Shown here: positions 1 through 47,825 of the stretch, one piece after another
How positions within the stretch are numbered: the stretch's first letter is position 1
Layout: each line of letters opens with the position of its first letter
Assembly: GCA_026770705.1 (NCBI GenBank)
Contig: JANJGN010000009.1
Span: 163,370,001-163,434,000 of the forward strand
Direction: 5' to 3'
Length of the DNA stretch: 64,000 nt
Source: Isurus oxyrinchus
Taxonomy: Eukaryota
The notes under the pieces: generated by a model
The model's input: only the letters and a program-made list of their open reading frames with translations
Told to the model about the DNA's origin: nothing
The model's database searches: none
Translations under genes and position numbers: made by a program

Positions 1-333
1 AAATGCATTGGAAGCAGTTCAGAGAAGGTTTACCAGGCTAATACCAGGAATGGGTGGATTGTCTAATGAGGAAAGGTTGGACAGACTAGGCTTCTATCTG
101 CTGGAGTTTAGAAGAGTAAGAGGCGACTTGATTGAAACATATAAGTTCCTGAGGAGACTTGACAGGGTGAGTGCAGAGAGGAAGTTTCCTCTTGTGGGAA
201 AATGAGGGGTCACCCATTTAGAACACAGATTAGGTGATTTTTTTTTAACTCAGAGGCTTGTGAGTCTTTGGAAATCTCTTCCTGAAAAAGTGGTGAAGGG
301 GAGTCTTCGAATATTTTTAAGGCAGAGGTGGAG
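1..333 (+). mobile_element. CR1-clade LINE 3' end (HER1-like)
   Basis: LEAVQRRFTRLIPGMGGLSNEERLDRLG...RGDLIETYK is the CR1 ORF2 C-terminus. Confidence 0.9.
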
Positions 334-475
334 TGGTACAAATCAGCAGTAACTTGTGGCATTTCACGATTCATTGGCTTTTTTCTTCATCGTCAAAAGT
401 TGCTGACTGATTTTCACATTAAAAGAGGTGTTTGTTGTTCAAACCCCATTATATTTTCAGTAAGTTCTAGCCCAT

Positions 476-1070
476 TGTTATAGAGTTGATTTTCTAGGCA
501 ACTTTTCTGGAGGGAAACATTGAACTTTATTTACAAGACAGCAGCAGCAGCTACATGTGTGTATCTAACTCTATAACTAAAGGAGAACTCCCCGTGGAGG
601 TTCCCCATGCTGCAAACTGGTTGGTTTACACAGATCATGTTCTCTTACAACAAAGCATTATTCTTAATGTTACAGTCCCACGTTTATTGAAACTATAATT
701 ATTATATTCCTCACCCTTTAACTTTTCTGTACATTTTGCATTTACAAAGATGTTTATCTTATGACATTAAAATATTTACACAGGTCATGAAATTATAAGT
801 TCAGTCTTTCAAGTGGTTTCCTGATCCATGTGGAATGTCATAGCTTCACCATCTCTGATTCTCTGACAGGAACCACAGTCTCTGCAATAACATCAGGTAC
901 CTCATTAGGCACAGGCAGATCAGTGTCGTCCACTCCGACAGAGACATCGGGCATGACTATCCTTGGTTGTACAATTTTAACAGGAACCACAGGTTCAACA
1001 ATGGCTACAGGTGGAACATCATTTTGTGGGGTATCTCCATTCTTTTTAAAACAATCAGGAGCTTACGGGT
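476..1070 (-). mobile_element. Gypsy-type LTR retrotransposon relic: integrase C-terminus, PPT and short 3' LTR (476-706)
   Basis: Minus strand reads ...VVPVRESEMVKL*HSTWIRKPLERLNL* (RRSxRxRKPPxRL-type end). This is followed by the purine tract aaagggtgaggaa and an LTR ending ...ataaca. The B copy begins with TG. Confidence 0.65.
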
Positions 1071-1141
1071 GATCCTCAAAGATTAGCAAATAAAACCAAA
1101 ATATTAAGAAATCTCTGTATTCAATTGGACAACTAAATTTC

Positions 1142-1151
1142 GGAAATGAAA
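1142..1151 (+). promoter_or_regulatory. Candidate Ets-IRF composite element (GGAAatGAAA) upstream of gene A
   Basis: Exact GGAAnnGAAA about 380 bp upstream of the ATG; motif match only. Confidence 0.25.
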
Positions 1152-1419
1152 AAAATACTTCTGTTCCTGTGGGGTTTGTGGAAATTGGGAGGGGGTTCCT
1201 GTTCTAACTCACCTCACAATTCAGTATCAATACTAGCTCAGCTCATCATTATCCATATGTTCTAACTTTTTAACATTCTTGTTTTCAGGATTTTAAATAA
1301 TTTCAATGAAAATTAGTTTAGTTCTTTTGTTAAATATAACTGACAGAAGTTCAAGTTCTTAGGGGTCAGATTTCATCAGCTGCCTTAATGTGGCTTCATG
1401 ACCTGGCTTCCTGCTATCT

Positions 1420-1432
1420 TCTTCCTCATTTA
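1420..1432 (-). promoter_or_regulatory. Candidate PU.1/Spi site (aaatGAGGAAg) in proximal promoter, kept in B (~47466-47476)
   Basis: Purine-rich GAGGAA core about 100 bp upstream of the ATG, next to an AGATAG; motif match only. Confidence 0.3.
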
Positions 1433-1531
1433 AATTCCTTGTAACATTTACATTAGACAATTATTTCGATGTGAGAAACAAGAGCTGAGTGTCTGGAAAC
1501 AAGTTCTGTCCTGATCTTTGTGAACAAAACG

Positions 1532-1568
1532 ATGTGGATTTTGATTCTCCTCATTAGTTCTCTGCCCG
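1532..1568 (+). CDS. Gene A exon 1, signal peptide MWILILLISSLP
   Basis: ATG, hydrophobic leader, phase-1 donor G|gtgagt; joins in frame to exon 2 (VSGA-LW). Confidence 0.88.
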
Positions 1569-4500
1569 GTGAGTGACAGCCAGAGCTGGATATTCCAATA
1601 ATCTGAGTTGGTTTAAATCTCGTGCGCTGGTTATATAGCAGATGTTTAAATATTTGGAGACATGCAAAGGCACAAAAGAGGTCTTGGGCACAATGGGTAG
1701 TGTCTCTGTATCTGAGCCAGAAGCTCTGTGTTTGAGTCCCACTTCTGTTCTTGTTGAGAATGGAAGGCGCGTTCTAACCAGGCCCAACAGGTTGATTATC
1801 AACCTGAACATCTTCCAACAGACGTAAGGCTGGTGGGAAGAGGGTTTGAGATCCCAGTCCAACATGCTTGATGTGGAGTGGTGCCACTCATTCTGTTGTC
1901 TCCGGAGGTTAGTGACCTGTTCCGGGGAAAACAAGCTTTGGAATGCAAAAGTAAAATATGCTTTGTCCGCCGCATCCGTCTCTAGATGTGGGAAGTCTCC
2001 TAAGTCTAAAGGCACAAAATAGTCAGCAAAACCAAATGAATAATAATTGTGAAGTATTTTATTACCCTGTGAATTTACTATCACACCATGGGAATAGTTA
2101 ACAAATAAACTGAACTGCATTATTAACTATGAATGATAAGTAAAGGAGAATTAAATTTTCAGAAAGCTATGCAAGCAACATTTTGAAAATGAAAACCTTT
2201 TTTAATTGGTAATTTTCAATATAATCTGATGTCCAGTATAGACTGAAGACTGCAGCGGTAATAATCCCACAAATAAAACATGTCCCAAGTTGGCGAATAT
2301 TTCTGTTTTTTAAAGTACAGTTGATGAAATATTGTGTTATGAGGCTCTCTCAGTGACACTGTTCCTCACTGGTAGATGGTTGGTCTACATCACTCTTCTC
2401 ATAAGTAGCCTTTTCTTGTTCATTCTTTAACTTTAAGAAACTAGATTTTGCTCATCACTCAGTATTGCCACCTCTCCATCATTTTCGATGAATCTGTTTT
2501 ATAACACACAATGTTAAACTCCCAGCCCCATCTGCTCTTAACCACCTCCCCAAAATAGTTTGTGCCTCTAGCTGATCAATTTTATGCAGAATACTTGATG
2601 TACTTATGGACAGGAAACTGAATCATGTTTCTGTCTGTTTGGCAATCTTCTTCTTTTCAATCCTTCCTCTTTCTGATCTGATCTCTTTCCCATTCCCTTT
2701 TCATCTGTAACTTTCCCTGTATCTTTTTCCTTTCCTTCACTTCTCTCTAGCCATTTAATTATTTTCAATCTCTCTTTTCTTATGTTAGTGCAAACTCTTT
2801 CCCCACAGCATGAGTTTCTCTCCCGGCAAGGCCATTGGTCTCATGAATATTCATGTCAATGCAGCCAAATCTCTACCTCAGGAATCCATCCAGCCTACAA
2901 GGCCACCTATCACACAACCTCTCAAACTTTCAAGGCCTTCAAATCCTACCTCTGGACATCCCTAACTCATTCAAGATCTGAACACCCCCTCCTGCAAGGA
3001 CCCAACCATCTCCCGCACCCCACCCACTTCAGATCAGAGCAGGGAACTGTCGGCTCCTGTGACCCCCTCCACACTGCTCCCCAACCGACTGCAAATCAGG
3101 CCTGTCAGTCAGGCTGGTTTCTGGCTGTGGAACCTCAGGATGATGTCATACGCAGTCTAGGGTGAAACCCCACAGTATGAGGCAGAACCCCAATTTCCAG
3201 GTTCCCCTCACTCTACCACCCCCTGTCAATAAGTCAAGAAAATGCCCCAAATATCTCACAAGTAAATCATTGTCTGTGACGTGCTTTGGAACACAGTGAG
3301 GCTCTGATAAGTGTCTATATGAATGATTACTCTCATCACAAACTTGATGGAATTTAACTCATTAAAATGCATCTGTTTGAATTAAACAGTTATTTCCTGT
3401 TCAATTCCTGAAATGTTGTCTCCTCAGTTTCAGGTGCATTGTGGGCAAAAGACAGAGTAACAGGAGTTGTGGGAAGAGCGATCACAATAGAATGTCACTA
3501 TGATGCGTGGAGGTACAAGTCACATATAAAATATTGGTGTCACGGCTGGACTCGCCAGTGTAATGTTGTAGCATCGACAAATTGGCGAAATGGAAGAATA
3601 TCGGTCACAGATAACAAGACACAAGGATTATTTATTGTTACTATGGAGAATCTTCACTCAGGAGATACAGGATGGTACAGCTGTGGTATTGAAGTAACTG
3701 GCCACGATCCAATGTTTAATGTAAAGCTACAAATATCTTACGGTACATTTCTTACTGATTTTCTTTATTATTCTCGACTGAAATGTTTGCTCAATGTTTT
3801 ATCCGGAAAGAACCCTGACAGCTCCGATATCCCGAGGCTCCACAGAAATGCAGAGTCTTAAAGGTAAAGGGCAGAGGTCGGGAAATCCAACTCATGTTAC
3901 CCAAACCCAATTTATGGCCTGTCCAACATGTCAGAGTTGAACTTTACAAGTGAACTAAATGGAAATTGAGAAGTTGTTTTGATGGTAAAAGAAGCCTCTT
4001 TATTAATTGTTGAGACATTGGGCTGGATATTCAGCCTCAAAGCGGGTAGGGGGAATTCGGAAAATTCCCCGCTCGGCCTTGGAAGAAAGTGCCCACAAAG
4101 GTGGGACTCCCATTGCTGGGAGCTGTGCCCGGGCTGCAGTCTGGCCAGCCACACCAGGAAGAAATGCAGTGGCAGCCACAGGGGCTGCCGGCTGGGGAGA
4201 CGGGCTGTTTAAAAGGCCCCTCCTTAATGCCCTTGGACTTTGTAACAGCTAAAATCAAAACACAAAAGCCCTTCACCCCTCACCCCTCACAGCCCACAAA
4301 GGGGGTGGGTGTAAGGGGAAAATTGTCATGAGGGGTCTTGGAGGTGGGTGGAAGTGTACAGCTTGAAGTCGGCAACACGAGGGGGTATAAGGCGTGGGTA
4401 AAGGAGTTAGGGGGCATGAAGGGCCAAGCGGGATGGATGGGGGTGTGACTTGGCATAGGGATTATGAGATGGACCTTTTGAAATTAACTGTTAAAAGGTC

Positions 4501-7500
4501 CCCTTATGCAGACCAGTGTTTACAGCTCCTCTGAGGGGCTTTGGACTATGACTCATTCAAAATCTGGACCAAGTCCATGAAAATTGCAGAGGAGTAGGAC
4601 GTGTCTATCTCCACAACGGAGGCAGCCAGGTTGGGGAGTTCTGGGTGAGGGTTTGAAGGAGCCAGCCTGTATCCTTTAAAGCTGCTCCCAAAATCACACA
4701 ACCCTGGAAAGCAGTTGGGAATCTCAGAATTAGGACACACCCGCCATTTTTAAAGGGCTCCTGAAACAACACAAGTTGGTGAAATCCAGCCCGTCACTTT
4801 GGTCTGAAGGCTGCACAAAGCACAGGGTAGAGGCCCTGGACTGAGACACCTGCCTTTATCTTGTACAGAAAGTGTTCACATGTGAGTGACATGAACATTG
4901 CTCATCAAAACAAGCAGCGATAGGCAGGGAGACATTCTTTGGAGTTTATTGACAATAATGAACAGTATGTACAAGTGATTAACACCCGTGCCCAGGACGT
5001 GAAACTACATCTCCTCAACTTGGTTTAAAGTTTGTAAGTTTCCTTTAAACTTTGCTCTTAGTTCTACAGCTGACCTGAATTAGGGGCTGTGCTGGATTTG
5101 TCCCAATTTTGTTAATTTAGTTTGATTGTTTGACTCAAGAAAGAGTTACATCTCCTCAACCAGGCGGTGTCTGGCGGCACCGTCGAGACCTTCCGTGCTC
5201 GGTGGGTGACCACGGGGGTTGGGGTGCTTTATCCACCCTCTTAATCACATTTTGGTTTGATGTTGTAAGTTTCCTTTAAATCCTGTCTTTGGTTTTGCAG
5301 TGACCCTAACTTAGGGGCTGCGTTTTATTTTATCCCTCATTTTGTTAATTTAGTTTATTTGGTTGACTTTAAAAGAGCTACATCTTCTCAACTTTCCTAA
5401 TCCTCCCGCTACATCTTGGTGCTCCGCAGACATCCAGAGTGGAGGTAAAGACAGTCTGCTGACTGCTATGCTCCGTCTGTGATAACTTTGGCGGGTGTCC
5501 TCTGGAGGCCTGAGGCCTGTAGGGCCCCGGCTTCCTTTCGAGGTCCTACTGTGTGGCATTAGCACCCTCCTTGGTCTGTGGATTTGGAGCTGTCAAGGTC
5601 ACAGTAAGAGGGGATTCGGTTGGGCCAGACACTCCTGGAGTTACCAGGATGATTGGCCCCAGAGGGTACACTTGTTGATCCTTCTCGCTATGGGTACCCA
5701 AAGGCCATTGGCTGAATGCTTGAGGAGCAGGGGTAGCTGGAGTGAGATCGAGCTGCCTGCACCCCTCTCGCATACACAGTTTCAGGGGAAAACTATGCAT
5801 CAGCAATGGAGTTCAGCCCCGCAGCAGTGTAGGAATGGTGCCCTGGACCAACGTCTCCATGGCAGCTGCCATCCTACCAGTGTTGACCTCAGTGCATTGA
5901 CATGCCGGCGCTATCACCTCAGAGTGCAGGCGGACGGACTCCTCCATTGTGCCTTGCAATCTGAGGGGTGCAGCAGATATCCCTTCCTGATGTTCCCGCA
6001 TTGGCCTTTCCAGTTCCAGCAACGGTGACATGACCAAATCCAGAAACGCGTCACCTGACTCGACCTCAGCAAATTTATGGCCTCCAGCTGCCCACTGAGT
6101 GCCGGACACCTGGGAAGCCCCTGCCGCTGCCAGCTGTGGATCAGGCAGTGCGATTTGCTCACCAGCTGTGACCCTGAGTCTACTCTAAAGCTAGATCTCA
6201 CCGAGGGGTGTGCCTCTGCGCTGGTGGAGGGTGTGGGTGAGGGGAGTGACGGTACATCAAGGAGGGTCCCTCCAGGTTCCTCTTCAGAGATTTCTTTGGG
6301 CCTTATTTGGTGTCCCTGGGTCTCCATCGGCTGTTACCCAGATGTGCGTGCAGAAGCAAGTGGAAATACTTTGTACATGGCAGTGGCCTGTGAAACAGGA
6401 CACATCACTCACAGCATCGTTGTCTGATGGATGTTGCACTGCTGGACCCTCACTTGGTTGAGCACCACAGACCTCATCGTCAGCACAGGATTGGTCCAGG
6501 CCATTGCCGTCCAGTTGGATGGCTCTGTTTTCAAAGTCCTTGCAGTGTTCAGGATCATGATGTCATTGCGATCTCTCCTCGGTTCCATTCAGGAAGCTGG
6601 GTAAACCCAGGATGTGCCATTAGATTCAAATGTATGATGAAAATTCATTAGAATTCAGCAATTTACATTTACATTTCTAACCCACCAATCTAAGGAGGCT
6701 TCTGCACAACCAGCCAAGTATGACAGAGATAAACACTGAGGTCAGCATCTTGAGTCAGATTCCAGATGTGACATTCCACATGTTAACCCTGACCCCATCC
6801 ACATACACTGCTCCGAGTCAAAGCTCCTTCTGTTATGGCATGACAGATGGTAAATGCCAAACTGCTGAAATCCCAGAGGGAAACATGAAACAGATGCCTA
6901 GACGGTTTTTCCAATTTGTATAGTATGAGGAGTGGTTCTGAAATCAGGAAATGATTTCCCTAAATACATGTGATGATTTTATTGTAAAGTAAACACTTAT
7001 TGAAAGAATAAAGGAAAGAAGACACAATTTCATTTAAACACCAGAATAGATTCAGACAGTAAACAGCATTTTAAAACTGTTCCACAAATCTTAACCTAGC
7101 TCACCTCAAAGCTAATCTTTCTCTTTTCTGTTCAAGAACTAACACTATAGATTTAAAAATCTATAGAAGTCCAGTAATTTTACCACACACTGCTTTTTCC
7201 TTGGGGTGTCCTCTGAGGCTGACCACATCTGGGTTTTCAGGTCTGGGCCTTGTACACACTGTCTCCTGGGAGTTCTGACCAGCTACCCTTCTGTCTTCAG
7301 GGAGATCTGGCCAACCATCCTGCTGTGTTCTGGGAGATCTAAGCAGCTACGCCCTTACATAGGCTTCAGTATTTCCTTAAATGTGTTTCTTTTCTTTGAT
7401 CTCTCTTTGTTGCAACCAGTCTGTTCAGGATTGCTTTTTTCCCAGGATTGATTAAATCAATCTTCACTTTCCTCTTAGACCTGTAAAAACAAACTTACCC

Positions 7501-10500
7501 TATCTTTATGTCACTTCCTTGCACCTTTTTACAACCTGCATATATCCCTCTTTGAGCTAAAAAAAACTCAGTTCAAACTATTCCTGTTATTGCTTCATGT
7601 ACAAATCTGTTGAAGTTCTTTTTTGTCCATTAACATATCAAAACAACTTCTTACTGTTGACTTTTGACCCTACCCACTGATGAGGCAGTCCACGTCATGG
7701 AACCATAACCTTAAATCTGGAGATAGGCTCGTCAGGGATGTCAGGAAGCACTTCTTCACGCAAAGTATAGTGAAAATCTAGAATACTCTCCTCAAAAAAG
7801 CTCTTGAACTTAATTGAAAATTTCAAAACTGATTGACAGATTTTATCTGGTAGCAATATTCGGGTTATGGGACCCAGGTAGGTAAATGGACAGAAGATAC
7901 TGGTCAGTTGGGATTTAATTGAATTGTGGAACAGGCTGAAGGGGCTGCATGTCCGAATCCCTTTTCCATGTTCTGGAGCCCCAGTTAATTTTTCAGTGGT
8001 CTGGGCCTTGTGAGTAACAATGTGCTGTGAAACAAGCTCACAAACAGTTAGCATTTCAAAGAGACACTTTCCAATCACCAGGCAAACTGTGACCTGTGTT
8101 GTTTCAGAGTACAGTTTGTGACAGTGAAAGCAGTGAAGGCCTGCCAAACCTCACTAAAAATGTTGGTGAAATTGTCACTTTTCTCTGGCTAATCCCTTGA
8201 CCAAAGAGGGAATTTTAATTCCCCTCCCCCATCCTGCATCGTGTTGAAGCATGATGGGATTTGCTGGATCCAGAACCTTCTCCAGCACGGCTTGTGATTC
8301 AGGAGACACACGAAAGCTTCACCCCCACCCCCAGGCAAATGTTTTATACAATTTCTCCCTCCCCATGATTGGCCAATCCTGCCCCAAGCAGCAAAGTCAC
8401 CCTGACTCCCTCCTCGCTGCTGTGCTCCGAGGACAAATTCCCACCAATTTCCAAACTTTTACCATAACGTTCCTACTTGGAAACCAGCCAAACTTTCAAT
8501 CAGTCTGCAAGAATTCTGGTGAGATTTTGCTGTTAAATTCGGCACAAACTCAACATTCCTGGTATTTCCAGCTTTCTCACCACCCCACACACAGTCCCCC
8601 CTCTCGTCTCCACGTACCAGGGTTGAAGTGTTCTATCGCAGCATGCAGAGAACCAGAGCCAATCACATTTACATTCTTATCCAAAGCTACAAAACATGTA
8701 ACCGATATCTGACAACATTTTGCCCTCATTTTCCCCTTTGCTTTTCTAAGATTCTCTCCAACTAATTCACATTCAACTCACAAACAATGAAACAGCATTG
8801 GAGGCTTACTACCAGCTACGAAGAGATATTGTTCGCCATGATATTCATGTTAACATACTCTCAGTATCATAGCTGCTGTTCTGATCTGGAGACCTGATTT
8901 GTTCTGATATAATGGCTGAAAGGGTAACTCAGGCCTCTAAGAGGATGGAGAGATATGGGGATGGATTTTTAAAAAGTATGGGGTCAGGATTAGAGGTGGG
9001 TCGGTGTGAAATTTGACACCGCTGGTCTCCATGCCATTTTACCGTTACAATCCCAAGCCCCAAATATTTAGAAAGCGGGCAGCTTGCAGTCAAGTGATGG
9101 GCAGCTAACTTAGGAAATAACATTTACCAAAGGGCCAATTAAAGACCCATTCCTGCGCCCACTGGGATTTCATTCAGCAATGCAAGCAGACCACATTGCC
9201 CCTTCAGGATCATGGTCTGGCGCTGCCCGGCTTTGAAACATAAAATAAACTTACCTGGACTTTCCCCTTGCTGTCTCCATGCTCAGGTCAGCAACTCCCA
9301 CCTCACCTGGTGAGGCCCTCTAGCATCAGGAGCCCGCCCTCTGTCCCTGATTGGATGGTGAGACCAGTTCCAGGCTTTCGATTGGCTGGAACATTGAAAA
9401 TTGCTGTGGGCATGCCTAAAGAATGGTGAATGGTGTCAGGACCTGGAACTATCTCCCATGTCCAGTTCCCAAACCGAAAATAAACATCGACCCCTTGGAG
9501 TGGTAGATGTGTTGGTGAGATTCCAACATGGCAGAGCCTGGCTGAGATGAAGTGCAAAGTTTGAAGAGTATTTGATTATTAAATGTTCAGTATCTGAATG
9601 TTTCTTTCTTTCCAACAGAACCCGTGTCTGTTCCTGTGCTTAGATTTTCATCACCGCTAAATGTCTCATGTTCTGGGGGTTCAGTGTCCGTCTCCTGTGA
9701 GTCTGTCCAGGGATCCCTTCCCATTCAGTACACATGGTATGAAAAGACCCTGTCTGAAGATTCAAAGATCTCTGACACCAATAAACTGGATCTACATTGT
9801 CAATCCTTCAAACAGCAACATCATCAATATTACTGCACAGCCTCGAATAATCAGGGGGAAAAATCCAGTGAAATGGTTAACATATCAATGATCAATATAA
9901 CAACGAAAAACTGCAGTTATTTGATACAAATTGGAAATGTTGGTAAGTGTTACTTTAGACAAACAATGTGGCGAATGAATGTTTTAAATTCATGTCTATC
10001 CAAACTGGTCACTGGTTCAGTTCCTTCAATCAATCTGAGAAATTGCAACTGGCCAAATTCACTCTCTCTGGTTCCTCAAACATTCTGAACAAGGTCACTA
10101 AGTTGCATTTTTCATGAAAAATGGACAGGATCAGAAAATATCCCCAAAACATGCAAAAATATTGCAGAATCTCCAACAAACCCATCGAATCAAAATAGCA
10201 TTTGATTGACAGAGCTTTCATAAAGCAATTTGTCTATTTCCAGCAGATGGAATTGTGAAATGCAACCTCCAACTGTTGTGTCCTAGTTTGGGAAGGATAT
10301 CACTGATAGAATAGAGAAGAATTGAATTAAAATGAACCCTTGGATGAGAGGTTTTAGTCATGAGGAAAGTATCATCACAACTGAGGTGAATGACCAGCTG
10401 GAGGACGTGGAAATTGTTAGAAATTTGGATAAGGTAACTCTAACTATTTCCACTAGTCAGTGAGTCAGCAACAAGAGAGCATTAACTTTAAAATTATCAC

Positions 10501-13500
10501 TAAAAGGACAAAGGGAGAAATTTGGAGAATTTTATTGATGCAAACTGTTTTTAGGACATGGAATGCCCAACTGAAATAAGTTTACAAACAAATTTAATAA
10601 TAGATTTTAAAAGGGAAACAAATGTATGAGGGTGTGGGAAAAGGACAATGAAATGGAATTAAATGAGGAGATCATTCAGAGAACCAGCATTGGAGCGATG
10701 GGCTGAATTCCCTCCCCTGTGTTGTAAAAATTCCATCATTCCAGACAAAATCTCAAATTATCCTGTATAAAAAATTAACTATTCCTTCCCCATAAAACAA
10801 TGACCCTGGTTCTGAAACAAGGAGGACTTTAGCCTATTTGAATGTAACGGTTCAATTTTCTGCAGAGTGGGTGCAGCATGTTCACCGAGAAACACCAACA
10901 TGGGCACAAAACAAAGAGAATCACATTTTCACCTGAGCAGCAGGAGACAGGAATTTACATATGCAAATATATTGACTCTGGTCATGTGGTCTCTTGCCTC
11001 AGTTGTCAGGGAAGAAGGGTGGAATTTTACACCCCCATTGCGGCAGGGACTGGGCTGTAAAATGCAGCCAGCCATTCTAAACTCCATGCACTCCAGCAGG
11101 ACAATTAAATCCCACTGTCACAAGCCTCTGACCAAAGGCTGTCAGCAGCAGGTAGAAATTACACCTGTAAACTGTGTTTGTACTGGAGTTGTCAGCAGGG
11201 ACTCAGTTGCACTCTGACCTTTGATGCCAGTCTTTTGTAGTTACAAGTTCCCCTTAAGAGTTAAAATTCAGGCTGATACCACTGTCCAGCACTGAGGTAG
11301 TGCTATACTGGTGGTGGTGCTGCTGTGTAGATGAGGTATTAAACTGAGGATCCACATCCCCCTTAGGTAGATGTAAACATTTCCAGGGTATTATTCACAG
11401 AATAGGGAAGTTCTCCTGGTGTCCTTGAAGCCTTTATTCCTCAACCAATACACACAAATTGGGAGCAGGAGCAGGCCATTTGGTCTTTTGAGCCTGTTAA
11501 TGTCACTACAAAACAGATCATCTAGTGCATGTTTTACTGATGTTTGTGGGGCTTTGCTGTGTACGAATTAACTTCCACGTTTCCCAATATTAAAACTTTG
11601 GCTTTACTTCAAAAAAGTACTTCATAGGCTCTGAAACACTTTGGGATATCCCAAGTTGTGAAAGGTGATGAATCAACACAACTTCTTTCTTACTTTTTGA
11701 AACAGACGATTTATTAAAATACATCTGAACCAATTATCTGAATGCAAACTGGAGGGGGGGAGGGGGAGGGAGGAGCCAGTCCCAGCAGCAAAGTGGGTCA
11801 TTATAATTAAATGGTCAGAAAATCACTGGCAGGTTTGAGACATCTTTACTGCAAGCTCAGAAAACTGTCCCTGAAGGGCAGAAAGTGACCATTGCCAGTA
11901 TTAGGATGTAACTGTTTAATGTGTTCACGTGAAATTCATGTCAAACAAGTGTATCTCTGGATTGTAGTCTACCAACCTGAGCCCTTAACTGGCCCTCTAG
12001 TAACTCTGTCCCACCAACTCTCAGATATAGGAAAAAAAGTGGAATTACCAGTAAATATAGATCACCATCAGGTATCAGCAACCTCTCCACTTATAACCAG
12101 AGAGGGGTAAATTACACAGAAATCAATTCTACCAGCCAGGCTTTTCCTCAATTAATGAGGTTCCTTTTGACAATGATGCTCTCTCTGTTGAATATAAGTG
12201 AAAATAAGGCAAATCTGAATGTTATTCCCTTGTTTCAACAGGACCGGACTATTTTTGTGAAGATTCTACAACAGTATCACCAACTATACATTTGACAAGT
12301 ACAGATATAATTTCCACTACCAATCGATCCACACCTTCAGATCCCGAAAATGCTGAAAGGTACAATGTTCTCATGGATTGGCATTGCTTCCATATGTGAG
12401 AGATACGATTGGCCAAAGGAGTGAAAGTTGTTCATTAATTTGGAAAGTAGCTCATCAGAATGGAAATGGTGGCTGGGTTTATATCATGCTGTTGTGTTAG
12501 CTTCTTAATGAGGGTGCATTTTTCTGTTAGAAAGTACAAGCAAGGAGTGAGCTTTTCCATTGTGTTGCCGCTCAGATGGTGTTTTTTGCCTTATTCACCT
12601 TGATTACTTCACCGCTAAGGTAACCTCACAGTGTGTGAGGAGTTGTACTTGTCAAACTTACCTTGCTGCTGTCTACACTGACAGAGTAGCTGTATTTGGG
12701 CTGATGAAAAGGAAGAATTAGCGTGATATATCGGCACATCCCTTGGTTTCACTAATGAGAGACATCTTGCAGCTCTGGTCCTGTTTCCATATTATTAGCC
12801 TAAGCTGTCGACACTAAGTAGCAGAAATTGTAGTCCGATGTAAACACTCAGGAATCGGGTCTTTGAAGTTACAATGGTGATAAAGAGAAAACGCCAACTA
12901 AATGTCAAACAGAAAGAGGGACAGTTGGAAATGGACAGCAGGTATGTCCGCAGCTGTGGAGAAAATAAACACGTTCATGGTTTGGGTACAGACACTTCTT
13001 CAGAATTCTAGTCCACACACGAAGCGAAGCAGGTCCACTCACCCCACAGCTCCCAACTGATCTGCTGAATGTTTCCAGAATCTTCTGTTTTCCATTCATA
13101 TTTCCAGCACATGCAGTGCACTTACTTTTATCCAGATAATCGTCAATGCTTTAAGAAGTATTGAAAGTCTCAGAGATTTGTCTTAAAATAAAAATCAATG
13201 TCTGCTCTGTTGTATAAAGTTGACTACAAAGATCATCTGAATAAGAAATCCATATATGTATGAAACAGTTATTGTTCCCATTTTTTTCAGGGATTATCAG
13301 GTATTCCTGCATTTGGATTTCAATAATTAAAACTGACCCAGTATTAAACAGGGCTCAGTGGTAACACACTCACCTTATGTGTCAAAGGCTGTGGGTTCAC
13401 TTCCGCTCCAGAGACCTCAGCACATTATCTTGGCTGACACTCCAGTGCACTACTGAGGGAGTGCTGTGCTGTTGGAGGTGCCACCTCTCAGATGTGATAC

Positions 13501-16500
13501 ACCCAAGGCCCATCTGCTCTCTCAGGTGTTGTAACAGATCCCATAGTGACATTCATAGAAGATCAGGGCAGTTCTCGCTTGAGACCTGGGCAACATCACT
13601 AAACAAAACAAATTATTTATTCATCCATCTAATTGCTATTTGTGGGAGCATGCTGTGTGCAAATTGAATGCCACATTTGCCAAATTACAACAGTTAAGCT
13701 GCATTGAAAATATTCATTGTTTGTAAAGTGCTTTGGGATGTCCTGAGGTCACGAAAGCCACTTTATAAATATCTACCTTTAAATATTTCTTTAAACAAAT
13801 GGCCAATAATCAATTGTGAACCAACACTGTCCCTTGTCTATTCTCTGTTTCACAGTCTGATTTACATTGTGCTCGGAGTGCTGGGGGGCATTCTTGTGGT
13901 GTTTGCTGTTTCTCTACTTCTGTACCTGAGGCAAATCAACAAGGGTGAGTTTCTATTTCTCTTGAATCATTTCATTATATGGCAATAATTTGCTGCAGAA
14001 TAGAAAGAATATACAGTTTGTTGGATCAATCAACAATCACCCATGACCCTAGTATTCTCATTCTAGTCTACACATATTGAACATGGGGCTGAATGTTTCT
14101 CTATTCGAGCGGGTGCACACCAGACCCAAACGAGAGTAAAATAGTGTGTGATGAGGTCAGACGAAACCTCATCAATGGGCAGGATGGGGTTTTGACCAGT
14201 GATTAAAGCAAAAAATTTGAGAACTCATATTTAAATGGCCATGGTCATGTGACAGAGTCACATGAGGGGACATGTTTCCATTAGTTTTCAATTCTTTATT
14301 TTGATTGTTCAAAATCTTCAGCTCCCTGAGGCAGCTCTGAGACTCAGGGAGCTTTCACTGTGAGCACGCGCACACATGCACAAACTTGCACGCTTGCCCT
14401 CCTCCCACCATCACACCAGCAGTGCTGAGCATTGCAGCGCGTATTATGCACTGACTGGCCATTAATTGTCCAGCCCGTATGAAATCGATGTTGGGGCCTG
14501 ATTCGGGGCAGTGGTCGGCTTCACAAGCACTCCTGAGCCCACCTGCCATGCCCACCCGACAAGGGCAAAATTCTGTCCATGGAATAATTAAGTTGAGTAT
14601 TGCTGATAAAAAATACATTTGAACAGATGAACAAGGAGCAGGAGTAGGCCATTCAACCCCTCGAGCCTGCTCCATTATTCAATAAGATCATGACTGATCT
14701 GATGGTAACCTGAAATCTGCATCCCAGCTACCCCCCCAGTAACCTATCACCCCCTTGTTTACCAAGAATCTATCCACCTCCCCCTTAAAAATATTCAAAG
14801 ACTCTGCTTCCTCCACCTTTTCAGGCAGAGAGTTCCAAAGATTCACGACCCTAGGAGTGAAATAATTTTGCCTCATCTCCATCTTAAATGGGGGCGACCC
14901 CTTATTTTTAAATAATGACCCCTAGTTCTAGATTCTTCCACAAGAGGAAACATTCTCTCCACATCCAGCCCATTAAGACCCCTCAGGATTTTATGCTGTT
15001 GAAGCAATCAGCACTCTCTTCTCATGCAGTATAAATTGTTGCTCCCTTTATTGTTGGTATTCTTGCAAACTGTCCTGATGAGAACAAGGCAAAAAGCTTT
15101 GACAGCTCGTCTGTTTGAGTGAGTAAAAATTGGGCCTCTGATTTCACCCTGTGATGAATTGCTTGACCTTCCATCAATGACACGACATAACAGGTACTTG
15201 TATTCAGGATAGAATTGATCAGTTTTTGAAATGCTCAATCCTAAACACACGGGAGTTAATTTTCTCTTTCACATCACGGGTGTTAATCTGTCAGAGTGCT
15301 ACGTAGAAATTAATGGAATGAAATTTGGGTGCATTCTCTAATAGACAATCTGTTCTGTCAGACAGAAAACGTCATATGCTGGTAGTGTAGTTGCTGGTTT
15401 CTGGTGTGTGTGGCCTATCTTACCGAGAGAAACTTGTGTTACTCTGTTACTTGCTTTAAACTGCTTTATTAACACTGTATTTAAGATAGGTTACAGAGTA
15501 GGTATGCCTCCCCTGAGTACAGAGTGTTCCATCCACTCTCCCAGGTAAATAGCACATGACTGCCAATGTCGTTGATACATCATGGTGTACATCACTCATC
15601 AGCATAGCTATTCTATTATCCCATTACACTACAAACACTTTTGTCATGCTATGTATAATTACCAGGCTGATTGTTCATTCCATGTTGGAAATCATTGGTG
15701 CAATGCAGATGAACGTATTTCCATGAATGTGGATCAATGTCAGGTTTAGCACGCTTGCAATACATGTTTAGTTTAGAGATTTTAAACATATTAACCATTC
15801 CTTGTTACTGCTCTTTCAACAGTTACATTGTAATTTTTCAGGTACAAACTGCATTCTAATTCATCGGAGAGACAAGACTCTCCATGATAATCAGGTAAGG
15901 ATATAAACATTACTTCTCTGAATACTGTTTGGAAATTTGCAAGTTGGTGGATATAGAATTTACTAAGAACTTACAGCCATTTGGCCCATCTGCACGAGGC
16001 TGGTTTTTATGCTCCACACGAACCTCCTCTCACCCCTCTTCATCCCACCCTATCAGCATATCCTTCTGTCCTTTACTCTCTCATGTGCTTATCTAGCTTT
16101 CCTTTAAATGCAGCAATCCTATTGGACTCAACTCCTCCCCAGGGAAGGAATAAGGAATTCAGAAGAAACTTCTTTACCCAGAGAGTGTCAGAACCTGAAC
16201 TTTGTTACTATAAGGCAAAGTTCAGGCAAATACCATAAATAAAGCTGGATAAAGCTGGATAAGCAGTTGAGGGAGAAAGTAATAGAAAGATATTTTGAAG
16301 AGGTTGGATGAAGAGGGGTGGGAGGAGGCTTGTGAGGAGAATGATACTGGTATAGACCCATTGGGCTGAATTGTTTGTTTCTGTGCTGTAAATAATTTTT
16401 AATATCTTGTAATCCTTTATAAACTGATTTATAATAATGGATACATAGCTTTCTCCTCATAACAGCACAAGTCACCATTCAGGCTAATCAAAAATAAATG

Positions 16501-16837
16501 CAATCTTTTTTTAAATATATTTTAGGAATTGGCAGCAGAGGAAGAGGACACTGTGTATGCAAAAGTAAACCACACTCAAAGGAGCTCGGCAGGAACACAC
16601 AGAGAGGGAACTGCCGAGTTGAATAATGAGGAAATCACGTATGCAGCAGTGCAGTTGCAAAAGAAATCGTCTACACAGAGAGGTGAAGGGACAAGTCACT
16701 CAGTTAACAACCCGGACAGTGTCATCTACAGTGGAGTCATGATTCACAACCAGCCCACAAAGAAAAACCCTAAAACTCCATTACATGATACTCCCCAGGA
16801 ATCTGAAATGGCAATTTATGCTACCGTTACTCATTAG
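1532..16837 (+). CDS. Gene A: CD300/pIgR-like (MDIR-type) inhibitory Ig-superfamily receptor, 7 coding exons, 415 aa
   Basis: Exons 1532-1568, 3428-3742, 9619-9942, 12242-12359, 13856-13944, 15842-15894 and 16526-16837 all have GT-AG boundaries. Phases are compatible (1,1,1,2,1,0) and total 1248 nt open to TAG. Architecture: SP-IgV-Ig-S/T stalk-TM-tail with 4 Tyr motifs. Confidence 0.92.
3428..3742 (+). CDS. Gene A exon 2, IgV domain of CD300/pIgR/TREM type
   Basis: Acceptor ctcctcag. Motifs ITIECHY, KYWC-x6-C (extra C-C' cysteine pair typical of CD300/pIgR) and DTGWYSC. Donor G|gtacat. Confidence 0.95.
4020..4792. mobile_element. MITE-like non-autonomous Harbinger-type element
   Basis: Termini gggctggatattc...gaaatccagccc. 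The B copy (~39873-44865) is split by the Penelope insertion. Confidence 0.55.
4793..6600 (-). mobile_element. Harbinger-type DNA transposon fragment (Myb/SANT-like ORF 3' half)
   Basis: Homologous to 56450-57900 (REHQEG...LRLQG...TEVNTGRMAAAMETL); degenerate. Confidence 0.7.
5020..5377 (+). mobile_element. Two tandem 5'-truncated Tx1-like non-LTR retrotransposon tails (5020-5145, 5161-5377)
   Basis: ORF2 end AVSGGTVETFRARW...GCFIHPLNHILV* plus a T-rich 3' UTR. Flanked and separated by three copies of ctacatctyctcaac. Confidence 0.7.
6831..7710. mobile_element. Possible solo LTR
   Basis: Termini tgttatgg...ccataac; non-coding; no TSD confirmed. Confidence 0.3.
9619..9942 (+). CDS. Gene A exon 3, second Ig domain (C2/I-like, FcR-like spacing)
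   Basis: Acceptor ttccaacag. EPVSVPVL...VSCESVQGSLPIQYTWY...YYCTASN. Donor G|gtaagt. Confidence 0.93.
11270..11690 (+). mobile_element. Deu-domain SINE (SacSINE1-like), degenerate; mirror copy ~34125-34550
   Basis: Core cagcactgaggtagtgct...gatgaggtattaaactgagg...ggtagatgtaaa. Confidence 0.6.
12242..12359 (+). CDS. Gene A exon 4, Ser/Thr-rich stalk
   Basis: Acceptor tttcaacag. GPDYFCEDSTTVSPTIHLTSTDIISTTNRSTPSDPENAE. Donor AG|gtacaa; phases fit both flanking exons. Confidence 0.85.
13350..13770 (+). mobile_element. Deu-domain SINE; mirror copy ~32020-32445
   Basis: tRNA-like head gctcagtggtaacac..., core tactgagggagtgctg, tail gtaaagtgctttgggatgtcctgagg. Confidence 0.7.
13856..13944 (+). 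CDS. Gene A exon 5, transmembrane segment
   Basis: Acceptor tttcacag. SLIYIVLGVLGGILVVFAVSLLLYLRQINK, with no charged residue in the TM. Donor G|gtgagt. Confidence 0.92.
14086..14579. mobile_element. MITE-like Harbinger-type element; B copy 31021-31710 is ~190 bp longer
   Basis: Termini ggggctgaat...aaaattctgtcc (B: gggcagaatttt...attcagcccc). Confidence 0.55.
14625..14990 (-). mobile_element. CR1/HER1 LINE 3' end; mirror copy ~30612-30975
   Basis: EMRQNYFTPRVVNLWNSLP motif plus a HER1-type tail. Confidence 0.85.
15382..15633 (-). mobile_element. Short solo-LTR-like element; mirror copy 29967-30219
   Basis: Inverted termini gtagtgta...tacactac and an internal AATAAA. Confidence 0.4.
15842..15894 (+). 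CDS. Gene A exon 6, membrane-proximal cytoplasmic
   Basis: Acceptor tttttcag. GTNCILIHRRDKTLHDNQ. Donor CAG|gtaagg; bridges phase 1 to phase 0. Confidence 0.85.
16526..16837 (+). CDS. Gene A exon 7, cytoplasmic tail with ITSM/ITIM motifs
   Basis: Acceptor ttttag. Motifs TVYAKV, ITYAAV, VIYSGV and AIYATV, then TAG. Confidence 0.92.
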   Translation, partial: ELAAEEEDTVYAKVNHTQRSSAGTHREGTAELNNEEITYAAVQLQKKSSTQRGEGTSHSVNNPDSVIYSGVMIHNQPTKKNPKTPLHDTPQESEMAIYATVTH

Positions 16838-16934
16838 CGAAACCATTCGGATGGCACATGTACTGCCCAGTGCACTTAACGTTGCATCTCAGTTGCATTG
16901 AATTTCTTCTGCCATGAGCTGTCCACATATTTAC

Positions 16935-17095
16935 TTTAGTCCAATTCTTCCTTTATCTTGGGAATTGTTTCCTCCATTCCCACCGCTCCTCCCAGTTTGG
17001 AATCATCAGCAAATGTAATCAATTCACCTTGAGTTTCAGAGTCCAGGACATTAATGTAAATTAGAGTGGTCCCAATACCAGGTCTTATAGCACCA
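16935..17095 (-). mobile_element. Old CR1 RT fragment in the 3' flank of gene A; mirror copy ~28505-28665
   Basis: IYINVLD...FADDSKLGG is a decayed YINDLD..KFADDTKLGG. Confidence 0.7.
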
Positions 17096-17139
17096 CACTC
17101 ACCAGCCAGACCCCCCACCCCCCCAACACCCCCAGCATT

Positions 17140-17590
17140 GGTAGCTCTGTTGCTGCTGATTCACAAGTTCCAGGTTTGAGTTCCATGCCAGGGCTTGAGT
17201 GGAAAATTCAAATGTTGAAACTCTGTTGTAGTACTGAGGGAGTGCTGAACTGTTGGAGGTGCTGTTTTTTGGGTGATATGTTAAACCGAGGTCCCATCTG
17301 CCTATTTGAGTGAATGTAATAGATCCCATGGCATTATTTTGAAGAAGAATAAGGGAGTTAACCCCGGTGTCCGGACCATTATTTCTCCCTCAATCCACAT
17401 CACAGAAACAAATAGCCTGATCATTATCACATTGCTGTTAGTGGGGGTTTGCTGTGCACAAATCGGCTGCTGCATTTTCTACATCACAACAGTGACTACA
17501 CTTCAAAAGTGCTCCAGGGGCTGTAAAGCTCTTTGAGACATCCAGTGATTATAAAAAACATGATAAAAATCCACAGCTTTCTTTCTTTTC
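17140..17590 (+). mobile_element. Deu-domain SINE; mirror copy ~28015-28465
   Basis: gtactgagggagtgctg...ttaaaccgaggtccc...agatcccatggca core. Confidence 0.75.
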
Positions 17591-17649
17591 TTTAACACAA
17601 CCGGCCTAATGGGCCAAATTTGTCTCAGCGTCCAACTCGAGTCTCCAAG

Positions 17650-28763: not shown

Positions 28764-29075
28764 CTAATGAGTAATGGTAGCATATATTGCCATTTCAGAT
28801 TCCTGGGGAGTATCATGTAATGGAGTTTTAGGGTTTTTCTTTGTGGGCTGGTTGTGAATCATGACTCCACTGTAGATGACACTGTCCGGGTTGTTAACTG
28901 AGTGACTTGTCCCTTCACCTCTCTGTGTAGACGATTTCTTTTGTAATTGCACTACTGCATACGTGATTTCCTCATTATTCAACTCGGCAGTTCCCTCTCT
29001 GTGTGTTCCTGCCGAGCTCCTTTGAGTGTGGTTTACATTTGCATACACAGTGCCCTCTTCCTCTGCTGCCAATTC
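28764..29075 (-). CDS. Gene B exon 7, tail with ITSM/ITIM motifs
   Basis: Motifs TVYANV, ITYAVV, VIYSGV and AIYATI, then TAG. Confidence 0.92.
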   Translation of the reverse strand, partial: ELAAEEEGTVYANVNHTQRSSAGTHREGTAELNNEEITYAVVQLQKKSSTQRGEGTSHSVNNPDSVIYSGVMIHNQPTKKNPKTPLHDTPQESEMAIYATITH

Positions 29076-47364: not shown

Positions 47365-47825
47365 CGTTTTGTTCACAAAGATCAGGACAGAACTTGTTTC
47401 CAGACACTCAGCTCTTGTTTCGCACATCGAAATAAGTGTCTAATATAAATGCTACAAGGAACTTAAATGAGGAAGAAGATAGCAGGAAGACAGATCATGA
47501 AGACATATCAAGGCAGCTGATGAAATCTGACCCCTAAGAACTTGAACTTCTGTCAGTTATATTTAACAAAAGAACTAAACTAATTTTCATTGAAAGGATA
47601 TAAAATCCTGAAAACAAGAATGTTAAAAAGTTAGAACATATGGATAATGATGAGCTGAGCTAGTATTGATACTGAATTGTGAGGTGAGTTAGAACAGGAA
47701 CCCCCTCCCAATTTCCACAAACCCCACAGGAACAGAAGTATTTTTTTCATTTCTGAAATTTAGTTGTCCAATTGAATACAGAGATTTCTTAATATTTTGG
47801 TTTTATTTGCTAATCTTTGTAGATC

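What the first reader, a model, noticed from the sequence alone, without database searches (positions are those of the whole stretch)
3428..3742. Strong diversifying-selection signature in the IgV ligand-binding domain
Seen, from a codon-by-codon comparison with 45460-45143: 17 replacement codons plus 1 inserted codon versus only 2 purely silent codons (GCG/GCA, GTA/GTC). Changes cluster in the BC loop (WR/QW), C-C' loop (HGWT/LGKS) and FG loop/G strand (EVTGH-DPMFNVK vs DKPGLLDSMFAVW). The TM exon is identical and the last exon differs at only 4 of 103 residues. Inference: germline CDR-like diversification of ligand specificity on a constant inhibitory chassis, as expected from a pathogen arms race.
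Basis: partly seen in the sequence, partly recalled or inferred. Interest (0 to 1): 0.8.

Follow-up and report, generated by a model that had tools for sequence, protein, structure and literature searches.

The report
Shark CD300-like receptor duplicates, divergent loops
Two intact, mirror-image copies of a shark inhibitory immune-receptor gene from a known family differ mostly in the loops that form the ligand pocket; the pattern is real but statistically modest, and it is usual for such gene families.

Summary
The count is exact. Between the V exons at 3428-3742 (+) and 45460-45143 (-) there are 17 replacement codons, one inserted codon and two silent codons. They belong to two intact, seven-exon, tail-to-tail inverted copies of an inhibitory receptor of the elasmobranch MDIR (CD300/pIgR-like) family.

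Replacements concentrate in the BC, C-C' and FG loops: 11 of 23 loop codons against 7 of 82 others. In mouse CD300lf, the best structural match, the C-C' and FG loops form the ligand cleft.

The signal is moderate, not strong:
- Omega is 2.0-2.1 and not significantly above 1 (p 0.2-0.3).
- The stalk exon has the same replacement rate.
- The arms' non-coding DNA also carries clustered differences.

Copy B's loop set recurs in a great white shark protein (15 of 18 sites). Copy A carries motifs widespread in sharks and rays. These look like old cleft types on a mosaic backbone, not a fresh arms-race burst.

Best reading: an adaptive shift of ligand specificity in the B lineage, plus patchy copying among paralogues. 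This is a new member of a known kind.

The parts
1..17649 (+). Arm A of the inverted duplication; carries receptor gene A
   Evidence: Self-BLAST gives 95.1-96.8% identity to 48889-27958 in reverse. MAFFT of the arms: 740 differences in 16,457 ungapped columns.
27958..48889 (-). Arm B of the inverted duplication; carries receptor gene B, tail-to-tail with gene A
1532..1568 (+). Gene A leader exon (MWILILLISSLP + G)
   Evidence: ATG, hydrophobic leader and GT donor. RNA-like contig X17 record 17 lies on 1481-1567 and 3427-3506, which is the leader-to-V splice.
3428..3742 (+). Gene A V-set exon: the finding
   Evidence: Pfam V-set E 8.9e-9. AF2 pLDDT 94.4. Foldseek best match is mouse CD300lf, TM 0.94. 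RNA-like runs have depth only over the exons here.
3507..3511 (+). BC-loop patch (A26 silent, W27Q, R28W)
3542..3551 (+). C-strand end and C-C' loop patch (H38L, W40K, T41S), between Cys37 and Cys44
   Evidence: In CD300lf the C-C' loop is one wall of the ligand cleft (PMC6166816, passages).
3693..3725 (+). FG-loop and G-strand patch (E88D, V89K, T90P, +Leu, H>L, P>S, N>A, V silent, K>W)
   Evidence: 12 substitutions plus a 3-nt indel in 33 nt; only 0.2% of 33-nt non-coding windows reach 12.
9619..9942 (+). Gene A second Ig exon (C2-like)
   Evidence: Weak Pfam Ig_3/Ig_2 hits and Ig_C17orf99 at its cut-off. 70% identical to skate MDIR3. AG/GT borders. Its 3' end holds a replacement cluster and a 6-nt indel against copy B.
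12242..12359 (+). Gene A stalk exon (Ser/Thr/Pro-rich)
   Evidence: tblastn with P0188. Borders. pN 0.093, omega 2.8.
13856..13944 (+). Gene A transmembrane exon, identical in both copies, with no charged residue in the span
15842..15894 (+). Gene A short cytoplasmic exon
16526..16837 (+). Gene A last exon with four tyrosine motifs (TVYAKV, ITYAAV, VIYSGV, AIYATV) and the stop codon
   Evidence: 4 of 103 residues differ from copy B; omega 0.36.
47328..47364 (-). Gene B leader exon (MWILILLICSLP)
45143..45460 (-). Gene B V-set exon (318 nt)
   Evidence: Pfam V-set E 3.4e-10. AF2 pLDDT 93.9. 96% identical to P0188 of Carcharodon carcharias.
35877..36206 (-). Gene B second Ig exon (330 nt)
33436..33553 (-). 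Gene B stalk exon
31851..31939 (-). Gene B transmembrane exon
29706..29758 (-). Gene B short cytoplasmic exon
28764..29075 (-). Gene B last exon
40017..44243 (.). About 4.2 kb present only in arm B, inside gene B's intron 2; holds a reverse-transcriptase-like ORF at 42110-43366
   Evidence: Alignment gaps of 732 + 3486 columns. RVT_1 scores 23.6 bits, below Pfam's cut-off.

Best explanation
The window holds two intact paralogues of an inhibitory receptor of the elasmobranch MDIR family. Each has a CD300/pIgR-type V domain, a C2-like Ig domain, a stalk, an uncharged TM span and an ITIM/ITSM-type tail. They sit tail-to-tail in an inverted duplication whose arms differ by about 4%. Their V domains are two distinct ligand-cleft types. 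Copy A keeps the canonical family cleft: Cys-HGWTRQ-Cys in the C-C' loop and G-x-D-x-M in the FG loop. Copy B has a derived cleft: the conserved Trp40 is replaced by Lys, the FG loop is one residue longer, and there are radical changes on the G strand. By analogy with CD300lf, which binds a phospholipid head group and a Ca ion between the C-C' and FG loops, the two copies most likely deliver the same inhibitory signal in response to different ligands, or the same ligand with different affinity. The derived B type arose before B separated from a great white shark gene and has been kept since. So the V-exon contrast reflects an older, mainly one-sided shift of specificity (directional selection on B) kept on a backbone that is reassorted and partly homogenised by copying between family members. 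It is not a recent two-way arms race. Shown: gene structures, fold, location of the changes, sharing of the B type, transcription and splicing. Inferred: ligand difference, selection, timing.
For: Both genes are open across seven exons with AG/GT at every border; the summed exon lengths of 1248 and 1257 nt are multiples of 3. Family: Pfam V-set; 59% and 70% identity of the two Ig exons to skate MDIR3; best fold match is mouse CD300lf, TM 0.94, rmsd 1.1 A. Loops: 11 of 23 BC/C-C'/FG codons are replaced against 7 of 82 elsewhere, p 7e-5; loop pN is 0.247 against 0.0395 in non-coding DNA. Counting runs of changes as single events, the loops still hold 6 events against 2.0 expected, p 0.017. The CD300lf cleft is formed by the CDR3 and C-C' loops over the Cys36-Cys44 disulfide, with Ca held by the CDR3 loop (PMC6166816, passages). 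Age and polarity: P0188 (Carcharodon) equals B at 15 of the 18 differing positions, A at 1, neither at 2. The tree is (A,(B,P0188)), with no support value read. A-type strings are widespread: HGWT in 45 of 137 other domains, CHGWTRQC in 7, GHDPMFNVKL in a Hemiscyllium domain. B-type strings occur only in P0188. Over 40 outgroup domains, B is alone in differing at 6.45 sites on average and A at 3.6. Mosaic: P0188 pairs a B-type V domain (96% to B) with a second Ig domain closer to A (84%) than to B (77%). Arm divergence is overdispersed, variance/mean 2.97, ranging from 1 to 26 differences per 300 nt. Expression: RNA-like runs of two related organisms cover only the exons. One contig shows the leader-to-V splice. 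One is A-like (7 differences in 265 nt, against 25 plus the indel between A and B). Others fit the B type (10 differences where B has 9; 3 where B has 3).
Against: Omega above 1 is not significant on this pair (p 0.31 and 0.21). Total exon divergence is matched by 4.1% of non-coding windows. With a looser event rule (gap of 5 or less) the loop excess vanishes (3 against 1.8, p 0.26). The stalk exon, which does not bind ligand, has the same pN (0.093). Five replacements lie in the D-E/E-F region, away from the cleft. I could not fetch any DNA of P0188 or of other paralogues (closed). So I cannot tell whether P0188 is B's orthologue in another species or a further paralogue, nor compare silent divergence. 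Equivalence with CD300lf residues rests on motif spacing and a fold match, not on a residue-level alignment. The ligand is unknown.
Confidence: 0.5

Rival explanations
1. One reading: recent, continuing diversifying selection by point mutation since the duplication, driven by a pathogen arms race, acting on both copies.
For: Omega is 2.0-2.1. dN of 0.0955 is about twice the non-coding divergence. Changes fall in the cleft loops. FG-loop positions 90 and 95 show three different residues in A, B and P0188.
Against: It is not significant on the pair. B's states are shared with P0188 at 15 of 18 sites, so most change is older than the B/P0188 split. A's states are the family's common ones, so change is mostly one-sided. 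Six codons carry two changes, and there are 9 adjacent-base pairs against 1.9 expected, which is unusual for independent point mutations at 8% divergence. No call bears on a pathogen.
Confidence: 0.12
2. Short-tract gene conversion alone: the three patches were copied in from other members of the roughly 1 Mb receptor cluster, or the rest of the exon and introns were homogenised around them. The excess of replacements is inherited from old, saturated loop sequences and needs no selection for change on this pair.
For: All 3 silent changes lie in or beside the patches. With patches drawn post hoc: Sd 3 of 11.5 silent sites inside against 0 of 54.2 outside. With structure-defined loops: pS 0.15 against 0.019. 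Changes come as runs of 2-4 adjacent bases. Non-coding DNA of the arms is also clustered, with 54 adjacent pairs against 21 expected. An organism-A DNA contig carries B-arm letters only at the cluster 2487/2494/2496, among 7 A/B-differing sites in its span. P0188 is a V/Ig2 mosaic. An earlier scan note on a sister pair reached 'patchy copying' (s1-866035).
Against: No donor was found. The window holds only these two V exons, and B-type strings occur in no other protein retrieved except P0188. The introns right beside the exon are at background level (7 differences in the 200 nt before it, 11 in the 200 nt after). So three separate tracts of 5-33 nt would each have to land on a cleft loop, which itself implies selective retention. 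The silent-site contrast rests on 3 changes and on patches partly defined by the differences.
Confidence: 0.25
3. Relaxed constraint plus clustered, multi-base mutation: the ectodomain of one or both young copies is drifting, and chance put the runs in loops.
For: Counted as events, the exon is not above the neutral rate (13 against 9.5, p 0.17), and the non-loop part sits at it (7 against 7.5). The stalk and the second Ig exon's end also change fast. Omega is not different from 1.
Against: Loop pN of 0.247 is six times the non-coding rate. Both genes are intact with all splice sites. Both V domains fold with pLDDT about 94. The B type is kept at 101 of 105 residues in P0188. V exons of both kinds are transcribed in related organisms.
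Confidence: 0.08

Closest known systems
Modular domain immune-type receptors (MDIR) of the clearnose skate
   Same: A multigene family of activating and inhibitory receptors built from CD300/pIgR/TREM-like V domains (PMC3031540, passages). The window's V exon is 59% identical and its second Ig exon 70% identical to skate MDIR3 (P0158). Database names of the shark and ray relatives are 'polymeric immunoglobulin receptor-like', 'CMRF35-like molecule' and 'Fc receptor-like'.
   Different: Skate MDIR3 has several V and C2 domains; these two genes have one of each. The original MDIR paper (Cannon et al. 2006, recalled) is not in the searchable library, so I did not read it and cannot say what it reports on V-loop variation.
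Mouse CD300lf (CLM-1) and mammalian CD300 receptors
   Same: Best structural match (TM 0.94, rmsd 1.1 A, 33-34% identity) and a sequence match of E 5e-16. It has the extra Cys-Cys bridge across the C-C' hairpin and a G-x-D-x-M spacing in the FG loop. CD300lf binds the phosphocholine head group and a norovirus capsid in the cleft between the CDR3 and C-C' loops, with a Ca ion held by CDR3 (PMC6166816, passages). It also has an inhibitory tyrosine-motif tail.
   Different: CD300 receptors have a single V domain and no C2 domain. The shark C-C' loop is one residue shorter (6 against 7 residues between the cysteines). Copy B lacks the family's Trp40 and has G-x-x-D-x-M. Residue equivalence was not checked by a residue-level alignment. 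SI Fig. S1 of that paper, which defines the loops, was not seen.
Gene conversion and escape from it in paired Ig receptors (primate CD300A/CD300C; ruminant CEACAM1 paralogue)
   Same: Copying between neighbouring paralogues keeps ectodomains alike (PMC12447643, abstract). A recently duplicated CEACAM1 paralogue is reported to escape concerted evolution under natural selection (PMC7042247, title and start of abstract only). This is the same interplay proposed here.
   Different: Those pairs have opposite signalling ends. Here both copies are inhibitory, and the arrangement is an inverted repeat.
Sister pair in the same genome (scan note s1-866035, about 0.5 Mb away)
   Same: Two roughly 97% identical MDIR genes with a divergent island over the V exon, read as patchy copying plus moderate selection.
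   Different: There the island extends 338 nt into the intron. Here the flanking introns are at background level and the excess is confined to three short loop patches. That note is an unchecked AI note, and I did not see its DNA.

Membership tests
CD300/pIgR-type V-set domain | V-set immunoglobulin fold | tested here: met
   Pfam PF07686 scores 36 and 40.5 bits against a cut-off of 26. The AF2 models have nine strands and pLDDT 94.4 and 93.9.
CD300/pIgR-type V-set domain | Closest solved structures are CD300 and pIgR D1, not antibody/TCR V domains | tested here: met
   phmmer: pIgR E 7.6e-36, CLM-1 E 5e-16. Foldseek ranks 1-8 are mouse CD300lf, TM 0.89-0.94.
CD300/pIgR-type V-set domain | Second cysteine pair bridging the C and C' strands, besides the canonical B-F pair | tested here: met
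   Cys22/Cys85 and Cys37/Cys44 are present in both copies. In the family columns, Cys37 is in 128 of 132 and Cys44 in 133 of 137. The bonding itself is inferred, by analogy with Cys36-Cys44 of CD300lf.
CD300/pIgR-type V-set domain | CDR3 metal/phospholipid motif (Gly-x-Asp-x-Met spacing of CD300lf G96, D98, M100) | tested here: inconclusive
   Copy A has G91-H-D93-P-M95. Copy B has G91-L-L-D94-S-M96, one residue longer. The match rests on spacing only, with no residue-level alignment to CD300lf. Binding was not tested.
MDIR (elasmobranch modular domain immune-type receptors) | Sequence homology to skate MDIR V and C2 modules | tested here: met
   Against MDIR3 (P0158): V exon 59% identity, E 9e-39; second Ig exon 70%, E 9e-47.
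MDIR (elasmobranch modular domain immune-type receptors) | Multigene family with inhibitory and activating members | tested here: met
   2075 representative proteins score at E 0.001 or better and 96 at 1e-30 or better. Both ITIM-tailed members (P0060, P0185, P0187) and members with a charged TM (P0062, P0069) were read. An activating-type TM exon lies at 63654-63782. Scan notes place many more copies within about 1 Mb (unchecked).
ITIM-bearing inhibitory receptor | Cytoplasmic (S/I/V/L)xYxx(I/V/L) motifs and a TM span without a charged residue (consensus recalled) | tested here: met
   ITYAAV and VIYSGV fit ITIM. TVYAKV fits the ITSM pattern TxYxxV. AIYATV is ITIM-like. The TM span LIYIVLGVLGGILVVFAVSLLLYL is uncharged.
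ITIM-bearing inhibitory receptor | Recruits SHP-1, SHP-2 or SHIP and inhibits signalling | not testable with these tools
   This needs phosphopeptide pull-down or signalling assays.
Gene under diversifying (positive) selection | dN/dS significantly above 1, for the gene or for a class of sites | tested here: inconclusive
   Pairwise omega is 2.06 (Fisher p 0.31) and 2.07 (LRT p 0.21). In the loops pN is 0.247 against pS 0.15. Site models need DNA of more copies, which I could not obtain (closed).

The most novel reading that the evidence does not exclude
The B-type cleft (Trp40 replaced by Lys, FG loop one residue longer, new Trp on the G strand) is a neofunctionalised CD300-like site that no longer binds the canonical phospholipid. 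It has been kept beside the canonical A type across lamniform sharks, by selection that blocks homogenisation of three short loop patches inside a converting palindrome. That would be a trans-species pair of inhibitory specificities.
Probability: 0.2. Interest if true: 0.5.

Novelty: new member of a known kind. Interest (0 to 1): 0.3.

Why it matters
It adds a cleanly annotated, transcribed pair of inhibitory MDIR/CD300-like genes in a shark. The pair is a natural experiment: the signalling end is nearly the same and the ligand clefts differ. If the two clefts bind different ligands, the pair would help show how germline innate receptors split specificities in the oldest jawed vertebrates. It would also show how selection holds short patches apart against copying between paralogues. 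As it stands the pattern is what is usually seen in vertebrate immune-receptor gene families, and this scan has already noted it for a sister pair in the same cluster.

Tried and rejected
Assembly artefact (two haplotypes laid down as an inverted repeat): rejected as unlikely. The window has no N. The arms are joined through a unique centre. Arm B alone carries a 4.2 kb insertion. V exons of both kinds appear in the RNA-like runs of related organisms.

A third V exon in the window as a conversion donor: none was found. The next tblastn hit has E 0.043.

More copies for codon models:
- The search for homologous proteins with the 140-aa reading frame over the exon gave 4 of 4 candidates, the best 71% identical.
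- The same tool with P0188's V region gave 34 of 42 candidates, none above 68% except P0188 itself.
- DNA of P0188's locus could not be fetched.
- Site models were therefore not run.

Read laying printed only 40 'other letter' rows and said 121 more were not shown. The per-site states of the loop patches in the other organisms are therefore mostly unknown, and I used only the per-contig counts.

Of the 40 rows shown, 18 read the B-arm letter at an A/B-differing site, 1 read a third letter, and 21 differ from both arms. I drew no timing from this biased sample.

Per-exon Nei-Gojobori counts used a wrong frame for the TM and short cytoplasmic exons. Their translations were redone (TM identical, one I/S difference), and their dN/dS values are not used.

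Papers: four searches for prior work on this family's V-loop evolution in sharks gave only PMC3031540, which mentions MDIR. They were 'modular domain immune-type receptor'/MDIR, CD300 + shark + positive selection, MDIR + skate + CD300 and cartilaginous fish + CD300 + pIgR. This says nothing about subscription journals. No supplementary files were requested.

The spliced models were never joined. Every search, fold and count was done exon by exon, and only exon lengths were summed.
Full report
WHAT IS THERE. The window holds a large inverted duplication. Positions 1-17649 match 48889-27958 in reverse at 95-97% identity. A full alignment of the arms gives 740 differences in 16,457 ungapped columns. 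Outside exons and outside a rearranged, transposon-rich stretch it gives 540 of 13,676 (3.95%).

Each arm carries one receptor gene of seven exons. All exons are open and have AG/GT borders in both copies. The summed exon lengths are 1248 nt (A) and 1257 nt (B), both multiples of three. The exons of gene A are:
- leader, 1532-1568
- V-set exon, 3428-3742
- second Ig exon, 9619-9942
- Ser/Thr/Pro-rich stalk, 12242-12359
- uncharged transmembrane exon, 13856-13944
- short cytoplasmic exon, 15842-15894
- last exon, 16526-16837, with four tyrosine motifs (TVYAKV, ITYAAV, VIYSGV, AIYATV)

Gene A reads rightwards and gene B leftwards, so the two genes lie tail to tail. I never joined the exons into a spliced model. 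All searches, folds and counts were done exon by exon.

THE OBSERVATION. At base level this is 25 substitutions and a 3-nt indel in 315 nt. The quoted patches exist.

On AlphaFold models of both V domains (pLDDT 94.4 and 93.9) the changes fall as follows:
- in the short helix of the BC loop (27, 28)
- at the end of strand C and in the C-C' loop, between Cys37 and Cys44 (38, 40, 41)
- in the FG loop (88-94, with the inserted Leu)
- on alternate residues of the G strand

Five more replacements (64, 67, 74, 76, 78) lie in the D-E loop, strand E and the E-F loop. The TM exon is identical and the tail differs at 4 of 103 residues.

HOW STRONG IS THE SIGNAL? It is weaker than 17:2 suggests, because 245 of the 312 compared sites are replacement sites.
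- Nei-Gojobori gives Nd 22, Sd 3, dN 0.0955, dS 0.0464 and omega 2.06, with Fisher p 0.31.
- A maximum-likelihood codon model gives omega 2.07, with a likelihood-ratio test against omega = 1 of 1.59, p 0.21.
- Against the much larger non-coding sample, dN is about twice the neutral divergence. Naive binomial p is 3e-4.
- That sample is overdispersed, with variance/mean 2.97. Empirically, 3.5% of 245-nt non-coding windows reach 22 differences and 4.1% of 312-nt windows reach 25.

The placement of the changes is the clear part.
- 11 of 23 codons of the BC, C-C' and FG loops are replaced, against 7 of 82 elsewhere (p 7e-5).
- Loop pN is 0.247, six times the non-coding rate.
- The changed columns are the hypervariable ones in an alignment of 137 family V domains: 2.23 against 1.10 bits, p 6.6e-6.

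Two cautions apply.
- The changes come as runs. There are 9 adjacent-base pairs against 1.9 expected. The introns also show such runs, 54 against 21 expected.
- If runs within 3 nt are counted as single events, the exon has 13 events against 9.5 expected (p 0.17) and the loops 6 against 2.0 (p 0.017). With a 5-nt rule the loop excess is gone.
- The rest of the ectodomain is not a constant chassis. The stalk exon has pN 0.093 and omega 2.8. The 3' end of the second Ig exon has its own replacement cluster with a 6-nt indel.
- Only the TM exon and the tail (omega 0.36) are conserved.

WHAT FAMILY. The V exon scores as Pfam V-set. By sequence its nearest solved relatives are pIgR domains and CD300/CMRF35-like molecules. 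By fold the first eight matches are mouse CD300lf (TM up to 0.94, rmsd 1.1 A).

A whole-library search finds 2075 relatives. The named ones are shark and ray 'polymeric immunoglobulin receptor-like', 'CMRF35-like' and 'Fc receptor-like' proteins, plus 'Modular domain immune-type receptor 3' of the clearnose skate. Against that protein the V exon is 59% identical and the second Ig exon 70%.

MDIRs are described as a multigene family of activating and inhibitory receptors related to CD300, TREM, FCAR and pIgR (PMC3031540, passages read). The genes are therefore new members of a known family. The nearest protein is from Carcharodon carcharias, so a lamniform shark is likely.

HOW OLD AND WHICH WAY. 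The closest protein, P0188 of Carcharodon, has a V domain 96% identical to B and 84% to A. At the 18 positions where A and B differ it equals B at 15, A at 1 and neither at 2. It differs from B at only four residues, three of them in the FG loop. A tree of 62 V domains gives (A,(B,P0188)); I read no support value for it.

Copy A's loop strings are common in the family. HGWT is in 45 of 137 other domains. CHGWTRQC is in 7, from bullhead shark to rays. GHDPMFNVKL is in an epaulette shark domain, and MENLHSGDTGWY in two more. B's strings occur only in P0188. Against 40 outgroup domains, B stands alone at 6.45 sites on average and A at 3.6. So most of the contrast is a derived B type that already existed when B and P0188 separated.

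P0188 is also a mosaic. Its second Ig domain is closer to A (84%) than to B (77%).

RNA-like runs of two related organisms cover only the exons of the laid stretch.
- One contig spans the leader-to-V splice.
- One contig of organism A is A-like: 7 differences over 265 nt, where A and B differ at 25 plus the indel.
- Contigs of organism B fit the B type: 10 differences where B has 9, and 3 where B has 3.
- Other contigs are A-like, or are further variants.

No run holds more than 43% of the stretch's words. The window's own species was therefore probably not among the runs served.

Whether it is B's orthologue or another paralogue stays open. Either way, the B cleft is not a private, recent product of this pair.

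MECHANISM. [quoted passage not shown] The cleft lies over the Cys36-Cys44 bridge, and a Ca ion is held by CDR3 residues Lys94, Gly96 and Asp98, with Met100 lining the pocket (PMC6166816, passages).

Copy A keeps the corresponding spacing, G91-x-D93-x-M95, and the family's Trp40. Copy B has Lys40 and one more residue between Gly and Asp. I infer that A is a canonical lipid-type sensor and that B has an altered specificity or affinity, both feeding the same ITIM/ITSM tail. This step is inference from motif spacing and fold, not from a residue-level alignment or any binding data. The paper's SI figure that defines the loops was not seen.

WHICH PROCESS. Relaxed constraint alone does not fit. Loop pN is six-fold above neutral, both genes are intact, the B type is conserved in P0188, and both kinds are transcribed.

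Between adaptive change and short-tract copying the data do not decide. All three silent changes sit in or next to the patches. With post hoc patches, Sd is 3 of 11.5 inside against 0 of 54.2 outside. With structure-defined loops, pS is 0.15 against 0.019. The arms are a patchwork of 0.3% to 8.7% divergence. One organism-A contig carries B-arm letters only at one 10-nt cluster.

On the other side, no donor is known, the introns beside the exon are at background level, and three separate tracts each landing on a cleft loop would still need selection to be kept.

My best reading, at about one in two, combines the two: an old, mainly B-sided adaptive shift of the cleft, kept apart on a backbone that is reshuffled and partly homogenised among paralogues.

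RELATION TO EARLIER NOTES. The scan's notes list many CD300/MDIR-like genes within about 1 Mb of this window. For a sister pair 0.5 Mb away they report the same kind of V-exon island, read as patchy copying plus moderate selection (s1-866035). I did not see that DNA. It agrees with my reading but is not independent evidence.

VERDICT. This is a new member of a known kind, of moderate to low interest. It would be worth a binding experiment if someone works on shark innate receptors.

Noticed in passing
window 9868-9942 and 35877-35957: The 3' end of the second Ig exon (G strand and linker) has its own dense cluster of replacements plus a 6-nt indel between the copies (EKSSE--MVNISMINITTKN against VKSSDTVTVNLTLMNVTTKS). 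N-x-S/T sequons are shifted. Here the Carcharodon protein P0188 resembles copy A, not B.
   Followed up: partly
window 63654-63782 (-): An exon encoding an activating-type transmembrane segment of the same family (IIWDVIRWVLFTLLVICAVS, with Asp and Arg in the span), 60-70% identical to the TM regions of P0093, P0167, P0195 and P0159. It is probably part of the neighbouring gene noted in s1-868869.
   Followed up: partly
window 53635-54178: A 27-nt minisatellite of 17.6 copies at 88% matches, open in several frames (Ser/Thr/Ala-rich or Pro-rich). There is no evidence that it is coding.
   Followed up: partly
window 40017-44243: About 4.2 kb present only in arm B, inside gene B's intron 2, with a 418-aa ORF (42110-43366) that weakly resembles reverse transcriptase (RVT_1 23.6 bits, below the cut-off). 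It was inserted after the duplication or lost from arm A.
   Followed up: partly
window 1687-1743 and 4171-4219: Two short stretches with very high contig depth and many loose ends in all four runs laid, RNA-like runs included. They are probably fragments of a high-copy SINE-like repeat in the introns.
   Followed up: no
window 10227-10826 versus 12034-12333: Arm-to-arm divergence is very uneven: 3 differences in 600 nt in one place against 26 in 300 nt in another. This suggests patches of recent copying between the arms.
   Followed up: partly
window 3478-3640 (contig X7 record 29): An RNA-like contig of a related organism differs at 18 positions with a 3-nt deletion at 3509. It is a further expressed V-exon variant, lacking the BC-loop residue that most family members also lack.
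   Followed up: no
window 3628: Copy A's Leu67 codon (TTA) is private. All four runs read A at this base, giving Ile as in copy B and in 113 of 135 family domains.
   Followed up: partly
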